DNA of 64,000 bases from NCBI GenBank assembly GCA_907165135.1, contig OU015567.1, positions 13,764,001 to 13,828,000 of the forward strand, given 5' to 3'. The translations under genes and the position numbers were made by a program. The notes beneath the pieces were generated by a model that was not told where the DNA came from, made no database searches, and worked only from the letters and a program-made list of their open reading frames with translations. Positions within the stretch are counted from its first letter, which is position 1; the number at the start of each line of letters is the position of its first letter. Of this stretch, positions 28,352 through 37,773 are shown in pieces. This stretch comes from Oikopleura dioica (lineage: Eukaryota; Animalia; Chordata).

Positions 28352-28884
28352 ATTTTTTTATTTAATTGATTGGATATGATTTGAAATACCCGAATCAGCA
28401 TGATTCTCGAAAAGAAGAGCCGGTCAAAAAAGTCTAGAAAGAGAAAGACTTCCTGAATTTACGAAATTTTGCTTTTTTGAAAGGGAAACTTGGCGACCCG
28501 GCAAAAAACTCAAAATTTGGCCGCTTTTTTCGGGAATTTGGATCTAAAAACCGGCCAATTTTTGAGTTTTCACTGTATATCATTCGACTCGTCTCGACGA
28601 GCTCTTCAAAACTAGACAAGAAGTTTTTTGACGAGTTCCAAGCCCGCGAAATTTTTTTTGAAATCATCTAAATATTGGATATCAATTAAGTGCCAAAAAC
28701 CGCTACCTAAATGTATAAAAGCCGGCCTCGGTAAACTCAGCGGGGCCAATCAAGCGGGCTGGTCCTTGTGCCACAAATAGCCGATGTCTAATTCTCATGC
28801 CCCCTGGCTCGCCTCTTCCCTCTTTTTTCAAAATAATGACACGTTAGACTTCAAAATTATTAACGATGCGGATTCTAGCGGGAA

Positions 28885-30216
28885 ATGAGAGTCTGCGTGC
28901 GGATCCCTGGCAACTCCGCGGACTTTATTGTCGAAGATATTGGCGAAAATGAAACAGTAGAAATACTCAAAGAGAAAATTCATGCTGATCATCCGCGACA
29001 CCCAGGCAAATGTCCATTTCATGTAAAACAAAAACCTTTTTAAACCTCTTTTGGACCTTTGAAAATAGAAAAATCTCACCAAAAACTGATCGCTGGAGGA
29101 AAGCTTCTCCAAGACGAGCAAGTTGTTTCTTCTCTCGCTCTTGGGACTTCAAATATTATCCATCTCGTTATTTCTGAGCAAACGAAAGAGCCAAAAGAAG
29201 CTCCTCAGCCAGAGATAGTTCCGTCTGGCCCTTCTGTTTCTGTCCAAGAAGAAACCGAGCCAACCGAGGAAATCAACGAAGAGAACAGCGAAAATTCGGA
29301 GTCTCGAAATCTCGAAAATGCTCAGCTTGAAAATGAGCAGACAACAGTCAATACTAGTGGCGAAAATACGGCAGCCCAGACACAACAGTCGTCAACTGAA
29401 AGTACAAAGGAAGAGGAATCCTGGCTCACGCCGGAGTTGAAGCGATACTTTGATGTTTGGGATCTGAGCATTAGATGTTACGAAATCAATGGCAGCTACG
29501 ATCATCTGGTGCCGCAATTAAAGCTTTATCGAAGTACAAACCGAGGAAAATTTCAACAGCTGAACTTTTTTAGATCTCATTTTTGAGAAAGAAAAGGCCC
29601 AGGCAAAAGGACAAACATTGAAGTCTTTCACGGAAATAATCACGAGGCCAATTTTGGCAGAACAACCGCCACAAGAAGAATTGCCACGGCAGAACCCAGA
29701 GCGGGAAAATGCTGTTGTTGGTGCTCAAGGAGCTGGTAGAAATTTCTAAATTTAGGATTGGTTTTTCATGCTTGTTTTAGTGGAAGATGATGGGCCTCAA
29801 GATTGGTTAGACAGATTTTACTCTTTCTTCCGTGTTTGTCTCATGCTCTGTCTTGTTTACAGCTACTCCTCGACAGGTGAAATCTTTTCATACCGAGTCT
29901 CGAGATATAAGTTGCTTTAGAACGATTTGTCACCGTCCTTGTCATTTCTTTGAGCATCATTCTCTATCAAGCTGGCGTTTTCAACATAAGACGACGGTAA
30001 ATTTCAGTTTTTCGAAGGCAAAAATAACAATTCTTCTTCAGAGCCCGGCCAGCTCCAGCTCAAAATGACACTGATCAGAATGATCAGGAGCCAAGAGACG
30101 GAGCTCAAGCTCAAGAACCGCCACAACGAGGGATCTTTACGATGCTGTGGGTTTTCCTCTCCTCTTTTTTCACCTCTCTCATTCCACAGAATCCAGCTGT
30201 GGTTGACGCAAATTGA
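28885..30216 (+). CDS. HERPUD: HERPUD (Herp) ER-stress UBL membrane protein, multi-exon
   Basis: N-terminal UBL (LKEKIHADHPRHP-EKSHQKLIAGGKLLQD), QDWLD followed by TM segments, and C-terminal LWVFLSSFFTSLIPQNPAVVDAN* resembling the HERPUD1/2 end. Confidence 0.82.
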
Positions 30217-30393
30217 AAAAGTTCAAATTCTCAAATGTATAAAACGAAGAACCCTCTCTTTCATTCTGTTTTTGGGGACCGTCTTGTGCAAATGTCCATG
30301 TTCTGATGTATCACTTCAATATTGAAACGAATCATTCAAATCTTACCTAATTCCCCTGCTTTTTCAGACGTTCAAACTTCTCTTCCAGCCACC

Positions 30394-30926
30394 ATGGGTA
30401 TGCAAATGTTTGACGATATCATGAAGAACGTCCAGAAGGAACTTCAGGAACAAGTTCACAAGGGTAAGAACTCTCCACCTCCAACTTCGCTTCACAAAAA
30501 TATTCAGTCAAGGCCATCGATGCGGAGCGACAAGCCATGGGCCGTCGAATTGGACAGCTCGAGAGCCAAATCGCCGAGTGCAAAGTCGTGCTCATGGAAC
30601 TCAGTAAGCAATCCATCAATTCTTATCTTCTCATTCCATTCTTTTTACAGACAGCGCTCCAGAAGACGCCAAGTGCTACAAAATCCTCGGCCCAGTCCTT
30701 CTCGACCAGAGCCTCGCCCAGTCTAAGGAAAATATCGTCAAACGCGGCGATTTGCTCAACAGCGAGCTCAACAAGTAAGCAAATTCAATTTTAACAGTGA
30801 AAATAACGATTTAAAAGGATGAAGAAACTGATCGCCGACTGCATCGAAAAGTTTAAAAGCGAGAAGCAGGCGCTCGATGAGCTCAATGCAAAAGCGAAGC
30901 AAATCAAAGAAGCCCTCGAAAACTAA
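30394..30926 (+). CDS. PFDN6: Prefoldin beta-type subunit (PFDN6-like), 4 exons
   Basis: Spliced translation QLESQIAECKVVLMELNSAPEDAKCYKILGPVLLDQSLAQSKENIVKRGDLLNSELNK matches the PFDN6 pattern KLLGPVLV. Confidence 0.82.
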
Positions 30927-31542
30927 GTTTCAGTTTTCGGAAAAAGCGGTTAGACTGTTTCCCTCCTCGCTCCTCGACTTCCAACTTCCTAAGCCTGGCT
31001 AGTCTGGTCCAGACTGGCTCCGATCCTATCCGAGCTCGTCTGGACCAGGTAATCTCACATTTTCATTTCTAGCCTTTTCTGTGCTAATAACCAGCTCAAG
31101 AACTTCCGTACCCACTATTTAATTCGACTCTTATCAATTGCTCTTTCTGTATCTCCAGTTTCCAGTCCATAACGAAATTATCTCTTCTACTTTTGCGGAT
31201 CTTTCTGTTTACAGCGAATTTGCGCTTTCTTTCGACTCTCAAAGTAATATTTTTTTTGCCAAAAATGAAGAAAGCTTATAGCAAATTTTTCGCTACACAA
31301 TTACCGCACATTACTCTCTCGCTCAACGCCCTATTATATCGATAGGGTTCCTATCAATCCATTCTAATTCATGATTCCTTTTTTCTTTAATATATTTCTC
31401 AGAAATATGAATTATTTACTGTCAATCGATATTTAGCAAAATCGTGCCTTTCCGGTGATAGCCTGTTTTACTTTTTTGCAGAATACTTTTCAATCTTAGA
31501 ATAAACCTTTGAAAGCGCAAAATTTAAAGAGTTTGAATTGAA

Positions 31543-34187
31543 ATGAACGAGGGTTTTGATATTGATGATGTTTTGTCGTGCTATTCGGTGCCTCTTTTGC
31601 CAAGACGAAACCGTGATTCATGAACGTTGTTGAATTTGTTTTTTTTTCTAATTCTATCGAACCTTTTTTCAACTACAGCAAAAGCACAGGCTCTGAGACA
31701 GACGGCGAGAGAAACAGTAAATCTCAACGAAAAGGAAAATGAAGAGGCGGAAATGCGACGAGTAAATGCTCGAAAAGACTTTGCCCGTCAAGTTTCGAAT
31801 ACAAGCTCAAATTTTGTCGAAAGCATAGCTGATAGCGAGACATTCAATATGCCAAGGCCCGGAAGGAGAAATGGGAATACTCAATCAAGGCGCGAGGAAG
31901 TAAGCCAAATTGCTGAAACAGAATTTGACTCCTCTCCTCCAGCTAGGGGAATCAGAGCTGCGAGAAATGACGATAGCATAAGGTTTGACCAAATTCGCGT
32001 TTTGTTGGTAACTCTCTCGATCTAGTCAAATCGCTGAAACAGAGTTCGATGAGCCGACGAACCCACAGATAAACCGTTCAAAGAAAAGAGAGCGTTCCCC
32101 ATCCCCTGAAGAACCATATTCCTATGGAACGCTGAGTGTCACGCAATCTTCAAAGCACCAGAGTACGCAATCGTCTAAGAGAAAGTACAGTCAGCAAACG
32201 ACTCTTCAGGCACCTCAGACTTCTTCCTCTAACACTGCTAGAAATTCGAGGTTCTCAAGGCGAGTTGACAATGTCTGCGGATCGGTCAAGATCAATATTG
32301 CTTCCGGCTTTCATTGCGGCTACGAAGCTAATCCAGATGGGTACAAAATCTTCGACGAGTTTCTTGAGAAGTCGTCAAAAGGTCGTCAACGCGCAGATGT
32401 TGCTATTATTGCTGGCAATCTCTTCAACAACTCTCAGAATCACTTCTCTTCAATTCAGCGAATAACTAGATCTTTGAACAAAAATATCTACAGAAAGTCG
32501 CTAATAACAGATGTTGAGATAATCCAGACCCCAAAAACAGGCTGTCCAGATATTGTCCAATGTCCAAAAATGCCTGTATTGATGATAGGAGGACGATGCG
32601 ACCATACCATGCGAGAACGTCATGGAAACGCAGCCAGGCAGACGTATCAATCTCCTGTAGCGATTTTTGAAGCCTCGGGGATTGCTCAGTCACTGGATGA
32701 TACAAAACTGTGTCTCGAAGAAGAGTGGACTTATGCGCCGACAGTTGTGCATCAAGACGGCCTCTACGTGGCAATCTACGGCATTTCTTACGTCGCGAAA
32801 ACTTATTTGCAGCAACTGGGAAAGGCGAAGTTTGTCAAACCAGTGATTCCTGAAGGTGCAGTCTGCAAAACAATGCTTGTTCTTGCTAATTCGATGGAGA
32901 AGCCACCTGTAAAGCTTGCTGAGCTAGCCAGCGGCTTTGATGTTGTCGTCTGGGGTGGAGAAAATGGCCCGAGTAAGGTTCAGTCTCCGAATGGAAATTG
33001 GACGATATCTACTGGTGAAGCACTTCTGAGATATGTCCACGAGGCCAATCTTGATCACAAAGAGTTCCAGCAAATCACCTTTACGCCACATGATATAATC
33101 GTCGAATCTCACGAATTCACCCAAGCGCGCCATCTTTTACTCGGCGAAGTGGTTTTGAACGACTATATCGGAGTGTTCAATACTAAGGAAGAATACGAAG
33201 AGGAGTTTGACAAAGCGATCAGCGAGAACTCGGAGAACATATTGCGCGATTATCCGGCCGGAACATTTCCTCAGCCTGCGATGATATTGAAAGTGGACTT
33301 GAAACGACCTGGAGGCCAGGAGCCACTTGGAGCAATCAATTCAGTTTTCGCTGGGCAGCAGTTTTGTGATAGAGTGTGGAACTGGAAGAGCTGTATTAGA
33401 TATGTGAAAGACAAAAAGTAATTGTCCGAATTCTTCATCAGTCCCATTATCTTTTGTTTTTAGGACGAAAAAGGAAGAAGAGAAACATGGACTCATTACG
33501 GAACCACTGATGGGTGAGTTTTTCGGCCCATATACTCAAATATAATTGTCTTTTCAAGATTCAAACAGGCATATTATCTCGGAAGTCTTGGAAGAGAAAA
33601 TCAGCGAGCAAGGGATTGAGAATCTCACCGGCAAGATCGGGAAAGACATCGCCGATGCTTATGGCATCGGAGATACGCAATCAATTCTTGATGTTTGTGA
33701 ATGGGTAAGTGGAGTTTACATTCAATTGTATAAAATGCAAAAATGTAATTATGCAATGATTTTATTGCTAAATTAAGGTAGACTTTTATCAAAAAAACTT
33801 TCAGATGAAAGAAGCGATGATCGAAGAGTCGAAAAAAATCAAGGAGAAGCAGTCACGGCCGGTTGTTGATGAGGCTGTAAGAACTCTTGGGACTGTTCTC
33901 AAAGACAAACTCGAGAAAGACGGCTCTAACACCATTGTCTACGCAAGGCGAGAGCTCAATAAAGGTGCGCACAGCGCTAGTGTGATAGGAAATTAACGTC
34001 CTTAGGTACAAAATCAAAGAAGAAAACTACAACGACGAAGGGCAGGACAAAATCCTCAAAAAGCAAAACGGTCGTCATTTCCGACGACGAAGAAGATGAA
34101 GAAATTAGAAATCCTTTCTGCAGCTCATCGGAAGAGGATGAAGTGATCACACAGTCTACTTCTCGCTCAAAACGCTCACGGCGATAA
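31543..34187 (+). CDS. Divergent MRE11-like protein with substituted catalytic residues and an N-terminal low-complexity extension
   Basis: The frame is open from about 32026 to 33418. Collinear MRE11-like blocks: VKINIASGFHCGY, ADVAIIAGNLF, MPVLMIGGRCDH, YAPTVVHQDGLYVAIYGISYV, FDVVVWGGEN and PAMILKVD...GGQEP...AGQQFCDRV.N.K. Confidence 0.75.
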
Positions 34188-34310
34188 ATTCGATTGTTTA
34201 TCTTGAATTATTACTGCCTATTTTTTCATTCCTGACAAATTCAAAAACTCACTGACTCTTCACACTTATACACTCCATTCTGGCGCTTTGTAATCAATAG
34301 TTATTTAGAT

Positions 34311-35277
34311 ATGGATGAAACTATCAGAAAGTTCCTAATTGGGTATATGCAGAAAACTAATAGACCGAAGACTCTGGAAATTCTACAAAGAACTAGCGCT
34401 TGTAGTTCAAAAGAAGAAAATGATGAGGGCAAAAGGCCGATAAAATTGAGCTTTCAAATACAAAAGCCACCTGAAAGGAAGAAAATCCACATCGATTCTA
34501 AAAAATCAAAGAGGAAACCACGCAAAAAATCGACAAATAACGAAACACTCGAGGAATCCGAGAAGAAAGCAGGTAATGATTGTGTGTGAGAGAACGTTTC
34601 ACCGATGTTTACTAGAGATTCCAGCAGACTTCATCAAAATTGTGCGGAAATTCGGCTTGCCCAGCGAGCATATCGATTTTTTCTACGAGCACCGCGACAA
34701 ATTCGTATGGGAAATAAAAGAGAATAAAAAGATCTTCTGTACAGCGCAGGGATGCGATTTCTCCGCTCCTTCATTGCCCAACGCTTTGACCGAACACATG
34801 AAAGAGTGCCATGATTACGGCGAGTACCCTTGCGACGAGGCTGATTGCAAGTTCGTTGCTTACGCTCAAGTTTGCTTGAGGAAACACAAGACGCAATTCC
34901 ATGGAACCGGGAGACGAAGACGCCTTACCCACGAGGATTTTTCTTGTCAACTTTGCGGTTTCACCACCATCCGACGTTTACTCCTTGACATTCACATGCG
35001 AATACACGAAAATCGTCAAACCAAATGCGAATTCTGCAGCTACACAGCCGTCACCGTTAAGCAAATCCACGATCATATTCTCTATCATTTTCGTATTAAA
35101 AACTTTGCTTGTCATCTCTGTCCTGCTTCTTTTCATATAAATGGCATTCTTACGCAGCATTTGCGGATGCATACGAAAGATTACGCCTGTGTTCACTGTA
35201 TGGAAACCTTCGCAACAAAAAATCAGTTTGACAGACACGTCCGTGCTTGCGAGGTTCGCCTCAGTAGATTCCAGTGA
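34311..35277 (+). CDS. LisH-like motif plus six C2H2/C2HC zinc-finger protein (copy 1), 2 exons
   Basis: N-terminal IRKFLIGYMQKTNRPKTLEIL; six fingers in ORF 34576-35277. Confidence 0.8.
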
Positions 35278-35375
35278 TTATTAACTGCCTCCTAATGGTT
35301 ATCATTGATAACTTATCAAATATATTATCATCATTCATTTGTTTTGGATCATTTAAAATCTGCAACTCTTAAGAA

Positions 35376-36251
35376 ATGGTCGCTGAGCTTGAGTTTGTCC
35401 GTCGTTACCTGCAAAAGACCGGGCGCTTAGACACGCTCAAAGTTTTGAATGAAGGAAAAACGACCCTGAGTTTTCCAATTCAAAAACCGCCGAAGAGAAA
35501 AATAGTCAATGTTGATGACAGTAAACCAAAAAAGCAGAGTTTGAGCAGACAAAGCAAGATTTCGGAAAAGGAACTACCGAAAAAGGAAGAAGTGCCTAAA
35601 AAATTCAAGAAGATTGCAAAAAAGTTTGGACTGCCTGAAGAGCATCTTGATATTTTCTACGAATACCGTGAATGCTTCCACTGGGAAACGATTGGGGAGA
35701 AGAAAATCCATTGTACTGTTCGGGGATGCGATTTCAATGTCCCTGCCAAGAGAAAAGCTCTTGTCGATCATATGACGAATGAGCACGCTTATGGGAATTA
35801 TCCTTGCGACAAGCCATTCTGCCGATTCGTTGGCTACTCGACCGGTTGCATTCGTAAGCACGAGACAATGTTTCACGGAGAAGGCAGAAGAGTCCCGAGT
35901 CGAAAGTACAGTTTCCCCTGTAAATACTGCCCGTTTCATGGTAAAGACAATCACGTGCTGGAAAAGCATCTTCGAATCCATGAAAATCGACTGATAAAGT
36001 GCGAGTACTGCAATTACACATCTGCCAACGAGCAGCATACTCATGAACACATTCTCCACCACTTTCAAGTTCGTAATCATCATTGCAGTTTGTGTGAAAC
36101 ATCATTTATCACCAAAGCCGGGCTCAAGAACCACATCCGCATTCATTTGAAGGACTTTACTTGTATTTCATGCAGTGAGTCTTTTGAAACCAGAAAGAAT
36201 TACGACCATCATGTAAAAAGCTGCAAAGTTCGACTATCCAAATTTTGTTAA
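35376..36251 (+). CDS. LisH-like motif plus six zinc-finger protein (copy 2, intronless tandem paralogue)
   Basis: LEFVRRYLQKTGRLDTLKVL, then LSFPIQKPP and KKFGLPEEHLDIFYEYR blocks shared with copy 1; same six-finger layout. Confidence 0.85.
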   Translation: MVAELEFVRRYLQKTGRLDTLKVLNEGKTTLSFPIQKPPKRKIVNVDDSKPKKQSLSRQSKISEKELPKKEEVPKKFKKIAKKFGLPEEHLDIFYEYRECFHWETIGEKKIHCTVRGCDFNVPAKRKALVDHMTNEHAYGNYPCDKPFCRFVGYSTGCIRKHETMFHGEGRRVPSRKYSFPCKYCPFHGKDNHVLEKHLRIHENRLIKCEYCNYTSANEQHTHEHILHHFQVRNHHCSLCETSFITKAGLKNHIRIHLKDFTCISCSESFETRKNYDHHVKSCKVRLSKFC

Positions 36252-36297
36252 TTCAGTCGCTCACTTGGAAAAAATTGCTTCATAAGAATGTTTTAGA

Positions 36298-37773
36298 ATG
36301 AAGCTCGAAGAATTGTATGAACTCTTCGAAAAGAACATAAATGAGCCGCATCGCGAAGAGACCCTCAATGCAATGGTTAATCATCCCCAAGGAAACATCC
36401 TTGCTCAGTGTGTATTTGAGCGAGCAAATGCGCCTCTTTTTCTCGCTGCTAAGAATCAGCTTCTTCCTAACGACGAGGGCGATGAATACGGCCCGTTCGA
36501 TTCTCTTTTGGAAGCAGGTTATTGCAAGAGGATCCTTCGAGTTATGGCCTGCGAGGATTATGTAATCAATCTCTTGAAAGACGAATTTCTGCGTAGATAC
36601 GAGCGTGAACCGGACAGTTTGTCCGATATTGTCCGAATTCTGGCCGATCGAGAAGAAATCAAGAACGAATCCATGATTCCAAAAGCTACTTTTGAGATGG
36701 ATGCGTATTACCCGACAGTGAAAATTGGCAGTGAGTGGATCATTTCAGACACTATGATAAATGGTCCAGACGCATGTAACAAATACGACGAGCCACAGAC
36801 AGACGGACTCGAGCTGTATGTTTACAAGATTTCAAGATCAAGTGGCATTCTCTTGAAGGAATTGCATCTTCCTCTGTCTTTTATTGGAATGCCGAATTTG
36901 CTTCTGGAGCCATTTCTTATTATGTTTGATGGAACCGACAGCTTTGAAGTTCACAATTTGCTCGAACCAACCGGGGCACCAATGACTATTAAAAGAAGTA
37001 GAGAAATAGTTGGCGATATGGACTTCGGCCTTTGGGCAGGGTCGAAATACGATAGCGATATTCGTATCAATGGAAAGCCCCCTGAAAGTGTACTTTTTCC
37101 AGTCGTCTATATGCCGAATGCAACGAGCGTTTGCGTAGAATGCACTAGAATTGGAAGATCGTCAATCCAGATTCTATGGAAAGAAACTTTCCATTTTCCT
37201 GAAGAGTACGAGGCTAATATGATTTTCTTAGACCGCGACAACTATGTTCTATTGATCAACGATCGAGGAGATACCCATATCTTTCACATTATCCTGTCCA
37301 AACAAAAAATAAAGCGATACTTTCTCGCGGCCTCAGAATACTTCTCTTTTGGATTGTTCAAAGAGCAACTTGTCATGGGACATTTTGGCTACACAACAGA
37401 TGAAAACAATCGCCAAGTTATGTCCTTCGGATTTTTGACTGACAAGGAAGACGAGAATTTTCAAGTTGCATGTTTCTTCAAAAATGGAGATCATGAAGAT
37501 ATTTCAATAGGAAGAGACCAGATACTGCATTTCAGAAATTTACACACTGAAGATACGACGATAAAAATAATAAGCATAGATTACCTGTTGAATTTTCTGG
37601 AGGATAGAGAGCAAGAAAAGACTATTCAAACTATTGAAATAATGGGTATCGCCGAAACAAAACCTGTCATTGAAATAGGTACTCTCTTAACGTTCGACAT
37701 CTTGGGTAAATTTCATTTTAGAGAGTCTCTCCGTCGAAGAAACTGCGAAAGAGAGTGCTCAGAAAGAATTTGA
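36298..37773 (+). CDS. Intronless 491-aa protein, possible F-box-like motif plus beta-rich C-terminal domain
   Basis: Long clean ORF preceded by a TTTTAG acceptor. PFDSLLEAGYCKRILRVM resembles an F-box start. The family call is weak. Confidence 0.6.
   Translation: MKLEELYELFEKNINEPHREETLNAMVNHPQGNILAQCVFERANAPLFLAAKNQLLPNDEGDEYGPFDSLLEAGYCKRILRVMACEDYVINLLKDEFLRRYEREPDSLSDIVRILADREEIKNESMIPKATFEMDAYYPTVKIGSEWIISDTMINGPDACNKYDEPQTDGLELYVYKISRSSGILLKELHLPLSFIGMPNLLLEPFLIMFDGTDSFEVHNLLEPTGAPMTIKRSREIVGDMDFGLWAGSKYDSDIRINGKPPESVLFPVVYMPNATSVCVECTRIGRSSIQILWKETFHFPEEYEANMIFLDRDNYVLLINDRGDTHIFHIILSKQKIKRYFLAASEYFSFGLFKEQLVMGHFGYTTDENNRQVMSFGFLTDKEDENFQVACFFKNGDHEDISIGRDQILHFRNLHTEDTTIKIISIDYLLNFLEDREQEKTIQTIEIMGIAETKPVIEIGTLLTFDILGKFHFRESLRRRNCERECSERI

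What the first reader, a model, noticed from the sequence alone, without database searches (positions are those of the whole stretch)
32250..33420. MRE11 pseudo-nuclease: all five phosphoesterase motifs substituted
Seen versus recalled human MRE11: motif I ATDIH becomes ASGFH; II GGDLF becomes AGNLF; III HGNHD becomes GGRCD; IV VIHQN becomes VLANS; V WGHEH becomes WGGEN. The flanking scaffold and cap region (PAMILKVD...QQFCDRV) stay collinear and the frame is intact, which suggests a maintained, catalytically dead protein rather than a pseudogene. Knowledge: MRE11 initiates resection for HR and microhomology-mediated end joining, and O. dioica has lost canonical NHEJ genes. Inference: a dead paralogue could heterodimerise with active MRE11, or act as a scaffold or decoy in a remodelled break-repair or meiotic complex.
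Basis: partly seen in the sequence, partly recalled or inferred. Interest (0 to 1): 0.85.

Follow-up and report, generated by a model that had tools for sequence, protein, structure and literature searches.

The report
Conserved catalytically dead MRE11 homologue
This Oikopleura gene encodes a full-length relative of the DNA-break repair nuclease MRE11 that has lost almost all metal-binding catalytic residues yet is conserved, transcribed and under purifying selection, so it most likely works as a non-cutting scaffold; whether an intact MRE11 exists elsewhere in the genome could not be checked.

Summary
Window 31543-34189 (+) holds a seven-exon gene, annotated as OKI2018_I69 chr2.g7872. Its large exon (32026-33417) encodes an MRE11-type nuclease-plus-cap fold.

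- **Homology:** Pfam misses it and single-sequence searches barely see it. A profile of three Oikopleura orthologues hits only MRE11 (PDB E 2.7e-6; hhalign E 5.7e-18 over 455 columns). Foldseek puts eukaryotic MRE11 first.
- **Lost active site:** six of the seven metal ligands and the catalytic histidine are replaced (D20G, D60N, N128R, H129C, H217 lost, H245G, H247N). The same replacements occur in all three O. dioica lineages.
- **Maintained, not decaying:** the frame is intact, core dN/dS is 0.16, and 9 of 10 differences to a 97%-identical relative are synonymous. A fully spliced mRNA of the Bergen orthologue (E4XLJ0, "Uncharacterized protein") was found.
- **Other retained or added parts:** the region aligning to the RAD50-binding helices and the metazoan C-terminal tail are kept. 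A new N-terminal extension carries tandem SQIAETEFD repeats.

I found no description of such a protein. It is a new variant of a known kind, and it would be remarkable if it is the only MRE11.

The parts
31543..31612 (+). Proposed true first coding exon. It starts MNEGFDIDDVLSCYSVP; the annotated model starts later, at Met 31753.
   Evidence: Matches the N-terminus of the Bergen orthologue P0150/E4XLJ0 (MNSDDDEILSCISVP). A GT-AG intron at 31613-31678 restores the frame.
31679..31982 (+). Exon 2, the N-terminal extension that canonical MRE11 lacks. It holds a conserved EKEN motif (31729-31746), the conserved block NARKDF..SNFVES..ETFN (31765-31848) and the first SQIAETEFD repeat (31900-31941).
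   Evidence: Conserved with L001 and P0150. Flanked by GT-AG splice sites.
32026..33417 (+). Exon 3. It holds the second SQIAETEFD repeat (spanning the 31978-32062 junction), a Ser/Thr/Gln-rich linker, the MRE11-like pseudo-nuclease domain from 32282 with degenerate motifs I-V, and the capping domain to about 33403.
33464..33513 (+). Exon 4, a basic/acidic linker after the cap domain.
   Evidence: GT-AG splice sites. The model reproduces P0001, and the same junction is spliced in the Bergen mRNA contig L001.
33559..33704 (+). Exon 5, helical region NRHIISEV...DVCEW that aligns with the RAD50-binding helix-loop-helix of canonical MRE11.
   Evidence: The hhalign alignment extends to Clavelina MRE11 residue 517. 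Helices are predicted there at low to moderate pLDDT. This region is strongly conserved between the Okinawa and Bergen proteins.
33805..33964 (+). Exon 6, a further helical C-terminal region.
34006..34189 (+). Exon 7, a Lys/Ser/Thr-rich stretch followed by an acidic, NPF, SRSKRSRR-COOH tail and the stop codon.
   Evidence: The tail matches the metazoan MRE11 C-terminal pattern of acidic run, [DN]PF and S.KR.RR, as in Microcaecilia, Nematostella, Pecten and Clavelina.

Best explanation
The gene encodes an MRE11-derived pseudo-nuclease of about 767 aa. Shown: it keeps the MRE11 phosphoesterase-plus-cap fold and the metazoan C-terminal tail, and its C-terminal part aligns with the RAD50-binding helices. 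Six of the seven Mn-binding ligands and the catalytic His are replaced, identically in three O. dioica lineages. It is under purifying selection and its Bergen orthologue is spliced into mRNA. Inferred: it cannot hydrolyse DNA. It acts non-catalytically in an MRE11-RAD50-type assembly, binding RAD50 and possibly pairing with a catalytic MRE11, to tether, mark or shield DNA ends or to temper resection. The added N-terminal SQIAETEFD repeats (SQ plus T-x-x-D, the minimal PIKK and CK2 site patterns) may act as phospho-dependent docking sites. I think it is most likely a diverged paralogue beside an intact MRE11 elsewhere in the genome, but that was not verified.
For: - **Homology:** profile against PDB hits only Mre11, E 2.7e-6, collinear over 377 positions. 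hhalign against 13 canonical MRE11s gives probability 99%, E 5.7e-18, 455 columns including the RAD50-binding region. The exhaustive HMM search gave 19 hits, and every hit I checked is MRE11.
- **Fold:** a model built from the three Oikopleura sequences alone has eukaryotic Mre11 as its top 30 PDB hits (E 9e-16 to 1.6e-10), with other metallophosphoesterases at 1e-6 or worse. The deeper model (pLDDT 77) reaches TM 0.79 against human MRE11 3t1i, and every Swiss-Prot hit listed is MRE11.
- **Lost ligands:**
- **Selection:** core dN/dS is 0.16 at dS 0.55 between L001 and L002. 9 of 10 differences to 96-97%-identical metatranscriptome contigs are synonymous. The degenerate motif windows are 82% invariant against 54% elsewhere.
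- **Expression:** L001 is 99-100% identical to Bergen scaffold FN653071.1 with all five introns removed.
- **Orthology:** the flanking genes are collinear between the Okinawa and Bergen loci.
- **Tail:**
- **Precedent:** the midge Sitodiplosis has a degenerate MRE11-like paralogue next to a canonical copy, and the ascidian Clavelina has two MRE11 genes.
Against: - No intact MRE11 from O. dioica was found in any search, so paralogue status is an assumption.
- RAD50 binding, dimerisation and loss of nuclease activity are predicted, not measured.
- The model has low confidence in the RAD50-binding region (pLDDT 35-70).
- There is no RNA evidence for the Okinawa lineage itself beyond unspliced-region contigs in one marine metatranscriptome. 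The three species-labelled RNA-seq runs barely mapped and appear to come from a diverged lineage.
- The function of the N-terminal repeats is pure inference.
Confidence: 0.62

Rival explanations
1. This is the only MRE11 gene of O. dioica, the true orthologue. The lineage kept the structural roles of MRE11-RAD50 (tethering, signalling) and lost the MRE11 nuclease, so other nucleases open DNA ends.
For: - It is collinear with canonical metazoan MRE11 from motif I through the RAD50-binding region to the extreme C-terminal tail.
- No second MRE11 surfaced in any search.
- The genome is known for heavy loss of DNA-repair genes: c-NHEJ (PMC6635534, PMC13746493) and H2AX (PMC3156773).
- A related dead form (L006) sits on another very gene-dense contig.
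Against: - None of my searches could scan the O. dioica genome or proteome, so absence of evidence is weak.
- MRE11 catalytic motifs are nearly invariant across the canonical eukaryotic MRE11s aligned here.
- From general knowledge, the nuclease is needed to remove SPO11 in meiosis and for mouse viability.
- The extreme stem branch and the novel N-terminal extension fit a released paralogue.
- Degenerate MRE11-like copies elsewhere coexist with an intact copy, as in Sitodiplosis.
Confidence: 0.28
2. It is a decaying or neutrally drifting relic of MRE11, or a mis-annotated ORF, with no function.
For: Pfam does not recognise it. It is about 20% identical to canonical MRE11. UniProt lists the Bergen orthologue as uncharacterised.
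Against: - The frame is intact across seven exons in three lineages whose synonymous sites are saturated.
- dN/dS is 0.16, and 9 of 10 close differences are synonymous.
- It is correctly spliced into mRNA.
- The substituted residues themselves are invariant.
Confidence: 0.03
3. It is still an enzyme, using a rebuilt active site (for example the retained His of motif I, Asp of motif III, and the new Cys and Arg) on DNA or on another phosphoester substrate.
For: The former active-site segments are the most conserved parts of the protein, and GRCD and GFHCGYE are invariant. H22 and D130 are retained.
Against: Six of seven metal ligands are gone, including both bridging and second-site residues. 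From general knowledge I am not aware of a calcineurin-like phosphoesterase that works without the dinuclear site. High conservation of these strands is also expected for purely structural reasons.
Confidence: 0.05

Closest known systems
Canonical eukaryotic MRE11 (human MRE11, S. pombe Rad32, C. thermophilum Mre11; PDB 3t1i, 4fbw, 4yke, 7zr1)
   Same: Same domain order: phosphoesterase fold, capping domain, helical region aligning with the RAD50-binding helices, and an acidic/[DN]PF/basic C-terminal tail. It is the best structural and profile match.
   Different: About 20% identity. Six of seven metal ligands and the catalytic His are replaced. The loop between motifs II and III is shorter and lacks the conserved N-Y-E-D segment. 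There is an N-terminal extension of about 210 aa with tandem repeats. It falls below the Pfam thresholds.
Sitodiplosis mosellana 'MRE11-like' XP_055324857.1 (P0008)
   Same: An animal MRE11 homologue with degenerate motifs (D60N, N128K, H129L, H217N, H245G, H247S), sharing GNLF and WGGE with the Oikopleura protein.
   Different: It is an independent, recent duplicate of the midge's own canonical MRE11 (100% support). It keeps motif I, is still recognised by Pfam and has no N-terminal repeats. It is annotation only; I found no study of it.
Unnamed degenerate MRE11-like proteins from environmental assemblies (L006 gene, including P0024; P0007 on L005)
   Same: They also lack most catalytic residues (TGGFN / GNLF / WGQSV in L006; SGICIG / GNLF / GKTD / WGGEN in P0007). 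L006 groups with the Oikopleura clade and lies on a very gene-dense contig.
   Different: The source organisms are unknown. The branches are very long, so the grouping may be long-branch attraction. There are no SQIAETEFD repeats.
B subunits of eukaryotic DNA polymerases alpha, delta and epsilon (inactivated calcineurin-like/Mre11-like phosphoesterase domains; from general knowledge)
   Same: A precedent within the same superfamily for a phosphoesterase fold that lost its metal site and survives as a protein-protein scaffold.
   Different: A different family, descended from archaeal PolD DP1. They do not appear among the structural hits listed here, which are dominated by MRE11.
Clavelina lepadiformis MRE11-like XP_076817958.1 (P0173)
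   Same: Shows that MRE11 has duplicated in at least one tunicate: 41% identical to the Clavelina canonical copy.
   Different: Its catalytic motifs are intact. It shows no special affinity to the Oikopleura protein (hhalign E 3.6e-8 against 6.5e-9 for the canonical copy; unresolved in the tree).

Membership tests
Eukaryotic MRE11 family | Calcineurin-like phosphoesterase fold followed by the MRE11 capping domain, collinear with known MRE11 | tested here: met
   hhalign probability 99%, E 5.7e-18, 455 columns. Foldseek top 30 PDB hits are all eukaryotic Mre11, even for the model built without canonical sequences. TM 0.79 against 3t1i with the deeper model. Every Swiss-Prot hit listed is MRE11.
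Eukaryotic MRE11 family | Five phosphoesterase motifs providing seven Mn ligands (D20, H22, D60, N128, H217, H245, H247) plus the catalytic H129 | tested here: not met
   Only H22 (and D130) is retained. G, N, R, C, L/A/S, G and N occupy the other positions in all three O. dioica lineages.
Eukaryotic MRE11 family | Pfam Metallophos (PF00149) and Mre11_DNA_bind (PF04152) at gathering score | tested here: not met
   No Metallophos hit at E<=1. Mre11_DNA_bind scores only 14 bits against a cut-off of 25 (E 0.054) for P0001, and nothing for the Bergen protein.
Eukaryotic MRE11 family | RAD50-binding helix-loop-helix C-terminal to the cap | tested here: inconclusive
   The profile alignment runs through this region (query to residue 644, Clavelina to 517). 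Helices are predicted but with pLDDT 35-70. The region is well conserved between lineages. Binding itself was not testable.
Eukaryotic MRE11 family | Metazoan C-terminal tail (acidic run, [DN]PF, basic S.KR.RR end) | tested here: met
   Direct comparison of C-termini with Clavelina, Microcaecilia, Nematostella and Pecten.
Eukaryotic MRE11 family | Mn-dependent 3'-5' exonuclease and endonuclease activity; dimerisation; NBS1 binding | not testable with these tools
   These need biochemistry or complex modelling. The sequence predicts no nuclease activity.
   These rank below all 30 eukaryotic Mre11 chains, with E-values of 1e-6 or worse against 9e-16 to 1.6e-10, and 1e-13 or worse against 6e-27 to 3e-22.
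Processed or decaying pseudogene | Frame disruptions, dN/dS near 1, no transcript | tested here: not met
   The frame is intact in three lineages. dN/dS is 0.16. 9 of 10 close differences are synonymous. A spliced mRNA contig exists.

The most novel reading that the evidence does not exclude
This degenerate gene is the sole MRE11 of Oikopleura dioica, and perhaps of larvaceans. A chordate that already lacks classical end joining and H2AX would then repair breaks, and process meiotic SPO11 breaks if it makes them, without the MRE11 nuclease. It would use a nuclease-dead MRE11-RAD50 scaffold whose new phospho-motif repeats recruit other factors.
Probability: 0.25. Interest if true: 0.9.

Novelty: new variant of a known kind. 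Interest (0 to 1): 0.62.

Why it matters
MRE11's nuclease motifs are among the most conserved features of eukaryotic break repair. A full-length MRE11 homologue that discarded them, yet has been kept under selection across deeply diverged Oikopleura lineages, is a natural separation-of-function allele. It isolates the scaffolding, tethering and signalling roles of the MRE11-RAD50 machine from its cutting role.

It sits in an animal whose genome is extremely scrambled and which relies on microhomology-mediated end joining. A regulator of end resection is therefore a plausible contributor to that biology.

The protein is invisible to routine homology surveys: tblastn with a tunicate MRE11 finds nothing, Pfam finds nothing, and UniProt calls it uncharacterised. 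Inventories of repair genes in larvaceans may therefore have missed it or miscounted MRE11. If it proves to be the only MRE11, it would overturn the view that the MRE11 nuclease is indispensable in animals.

Tried and rejected
1. **Pfam and single-sequence PDB search.** No significant hit. Only E 0.037 to C. thermophilum Mre11 appeared at a relaxed threshold. Profiles were needed.
2. **Searches for an intact O. dioica MRE11, all inconclusive.**
   - The word-indexed search with the exon found only the three Oikopleura orthologues.
   - The best canonical hit of the exhaustive search (P0004) turned out to be a mite MRE11.
   - A search with the C-terminal region found only the Okinawa and Bergen proteins.
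   - A metagenome scan with canonical motifs gave 80 loci, none tunicate-like with a long branch.
   - The locus closest to the window in composition (L025) is held only by marine metagenome and metatranscriptome runs, none labelled O. dioica.
   - tblastn of Clavelina MRE11 against the window found nothing.
   - Scan notes for this genome mention no MRE11.
3. **Literature.** Deng et al. 2018 and Denoeud et al. 2010 are not held. The tunicate repair-gene survey has no held supplements. No paper describes a dead MRE11 paralogue.
4. **Species-labelled RNA-seq runs X5-X7.** They mapped only in short conserved pieces, so they give no expression data for the Okinawa lineage.
5. **Phylogeny.** It could not place the dead clade beyond "within animals" because the stem is extremely long.
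6. **Organism of L006.** Could not be identified.
7. **A start codon at 31620 with a 52-nt intron.** Considered, then dropped in favour of 31543, which matches the Bergen N-terminus.

Full report
**What is there.** The window is Oikopleura dioica OKI2018_I69 chromosome 2.

My splice model reproduces the annotated protein g7872 (P0001, 719 aa), and every intron is GT-AG. The Bergen orthologue (CBY10905.1 / E4XLJ0, 876 aa, "Uncharacterized protein") shows that the annotated start is probably an internal Met. An upstream exon at 31543-31612, followed by a 66-nt intron, encodes MNEGFDIDDVLSCYSVP, which matches the Bergen N-terminus. That gives a 767-aa product.

The upstream gene's poly(A) addition is seen at about 31522, only about 20 nt before this ATG.

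**Is it MRE11?**
- Routine tools fail. Pfam gives nothing for the exon and a sub-threshold 14-bit Mre11_DNA_bind hit for the whole protein. phmmer against PDB gives E 0.037. tblastn with a canonical tunicate MRE11 does not detect the gene at all.
- Profiles settle it. An HMM of the three Oikopleura orthologues hits only C. thermophilum Mre11 in the PDB (E 2.7e-6, positions 4-380 against 8-409).
- The same HMM, read against 1.8 billion representatives, gives 19 hits at E<=1e-3. Those I checked by Pfam, name or alignment are all MRE11 or MRE11-like.
- hhalign against 13 canonical MRE11s gives probability 99%, E 5.7e-18 and 455 aligned columns, running from just before motif I to Clavelina residue 517, which is through the RAD50-binding region.
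- An AlphaFold model made from the three Oikopleura sequences alone (pLDDT 52) already has eukaryotic Mre11 chains as its 30 best PDB matches (E 9e-16 to 1.6e-10). Archaeal Mre11 and purple acid phosphatases trail at 1e-6 or worse.
- A deeper model (pLDDT 77, pTM 0.73) reaches TM 0.79 on human MRE11, and every Swiss-Prot hit listed is MRE11.

**Are the motifs really dead?** Yes. In a 38-sequence alignment, canonical MRE11s are invariant at D20, H22, D60, N128, H129, D130 and H217. At H245 and H247 two unnamed hits have N at H245 and the rest keep His. The Oikopleura proteins have G, H, N, R, C, D, L (or A/S one register away; there is no His in the segment), G and N. Only one of the seven metal ligands survives, and the catalytic His is Cys. 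The substitutions are identical in Okinawa, the Bergen-type lineage and a third lineage.

**Is it maintained?**
- The frame is open in all three lineages, although synonymous sites between Okinawa and the others are saturated (pS about 0.75).
- For the unsaturated pair L001/L002 the core gives dS 0.55, dN 0.089 and dN/dS 0.16.
- Contigs from a marine metatranscriptome that are 96-97% identical to the window differ at 10 listed sites in this exon. Nine are third-position synonymous and one is L-to-M.
- The degenerate motif windows are more conserved (82% invariant) than the rest of the core (54%).
- The JGI contig L001 is 99-100% identical to Bergen scaffold FN653071.1 with all five introns precisely removed. 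It is therefore a spliced mRNA.
- Flanking genes (ubiquitin-domain, prefoldin, then zinc-finger genes) are collinear between Okinawa and Bergen, which confirms positional orthology.
- Direct RNA evidence for the Okinawa lineage is weak. The three species-labelled RNA-seq runs mapped only in short pieces, apparently because they come from a diverged lineage. I gave read laying 5,801 letters.

**What else the protein carries.**
- The C-terminal exons encode a well-conserved helical segment that aligns with the RAD50-binding helices.
- They also encode a tail (acidic run, NPF, SRSKRSRR-COOH) that matches the metazoan MRE11 terminus.
- Upstream of the core there is an extension of about 210 aa that canonical MRE11 lacks. 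It has a conserved N-terminal peptide, an EKEN motif, a conserved NARK.F..QVSNTSSNFVES block and tandem units centred on SQIAETEFD.
- The repeat number varies: two in Okinawa, six in Bergen and at least five in L002.
- SQ and T-x-x-D match the minimal PIKK and CK2 site patterns (general knowledge). A phospho-docking role is my inference only.

**Orthologue or paralogue?** This is the main open point. No tool could scan the rest of the genome, and all indirect searches for an intact copy were empty but non-exclusive.
- Phylogeny places the dead clade inside animals on an enormous stem. It sits next to another degenerate MRE11-like gene from a gene-dense environmental contig (L006), and nothing more is resolved.
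- Precedents favour a paralogue. The midge Sitodiplosis has a similarly degenerate MRE11-like copy that is a recent duplicate of its canonical gene, and the ascidian Clavelina has two MRE11 genes.
- I estimate about 0.65-0.7 for the paralogue model and about 0.25-0.3 for the sole orthologue.

**Mechanism.**
- Shown: MRE11 fold, lost metal site, retained tail, selection and transcription.
- Shown only as a sequence alignment: the match to the RAD50-binding helices. Binding itself is untested.
- Inferred: no nuclease activity, and assembly with RAD50 and/or a catalytic MRE11 as a non-cutting subunit that tethers, marks or shields ends or tempers resection. The invariant Arg at the N128 position may occupy the former metal site. 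The N-terminal repeats may act as regulated docking sites.

**Known or new?** I found no paper describing a catalytically dead MRE11 homologue in Oikopleura or elsewhere, and databases list the orthologue as uncharacterised. It is a new variant of a known kind: a pseudoenzyme of the MRE11 family. It is analogous in principle to the inactivated phosphoesterase domains of the eukaryotic polymerase B subunits (general knowledge).

Noticed in passing
window 31900-31941 and 31978-32062; L001 215-700; L002 17-331: Tandem units of about 26 aa centred on SQIAETEFD lie in the N-terminal extension. The copy number differs between lineages: 2 in Okinawa, 6 in Bergen and at least 5 in L002. The motif combines SQ and T-x-x-D phospho-site patterns.
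   Followed up: partly
window 31543-31753: The annotated model g7872 starts at an internal Met (31753). An upstream exon at 31543-31612 plus a 66-nt GT-AG intron adds 48 aa that match the Bergen N-terminus. A short upstream ORF begins at 31739.
   Followed up: yes
window 31500-31543: The upstream gene has an AATAAA signal at 31500, and poly(A) tails are seen at about 31522, only about 20 nt before the proposed ATG. This spacing is operon-like.
   Followed up: no
window 31729-31746 and P0150 residues 33-38: A conserved EKEN (KEN-box-like) motif sits in the N-terminal extension of both the Okinawa and Bergen proteins. It could be a cell-cycle degron.
   Followed up: no
window 28700-36300 against L087 (Bergen FN653071.1): Gene order around the locus (ubiquitin-domain gene, prefoldin, dead MRE11, C2H2 zinc-finger genes) is collinear between Okinawa and Bergen, despite the genome-wide scrambling reported for these lineages. 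Okinawa has two tandem zinc-finger genes here.
   Followed up: partly
P0008 and P0080 (Sitodiplosis mosellana): The wheat midge carries a degenerate MRE11-like paralogue (D60N, N128K, H129L, H217N, H245G, H247S) as a recent duplicate of its canonical MRE11. This is an independent case of the same kind.
   Followed up: partly
L006 5268-7595 and L005 2938-5349: Two further MRE11-like genes with dismantled active sites lie on gene-dense contigs from unidentified organisms. The L006 gene groups with the Oikopleura clade and may mark an older origin.
   Followed up: partly
P0052 and P0173 (Clavelina lepadiformis): This ascidian has two MRE11 genes that are 41% identical, both with intact motifs.
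   Followed up: partly
window 30774-30818: A 43-nt GT-AG intron of the upstream gene is spliced out in a marine metatranscriptome contig (run X1). This shows that the run holds RNA from a close relative of the Okinawa lineage.
   Followed up: no
window 30600-36400, runs X5-X7: Three 2026 RNA-seq runs labelled with the same species name map only in short conserved pieces (84-100% of laid reads run on into unlike sequence). They probably come from another cryptic lineage.
   Followed up: no
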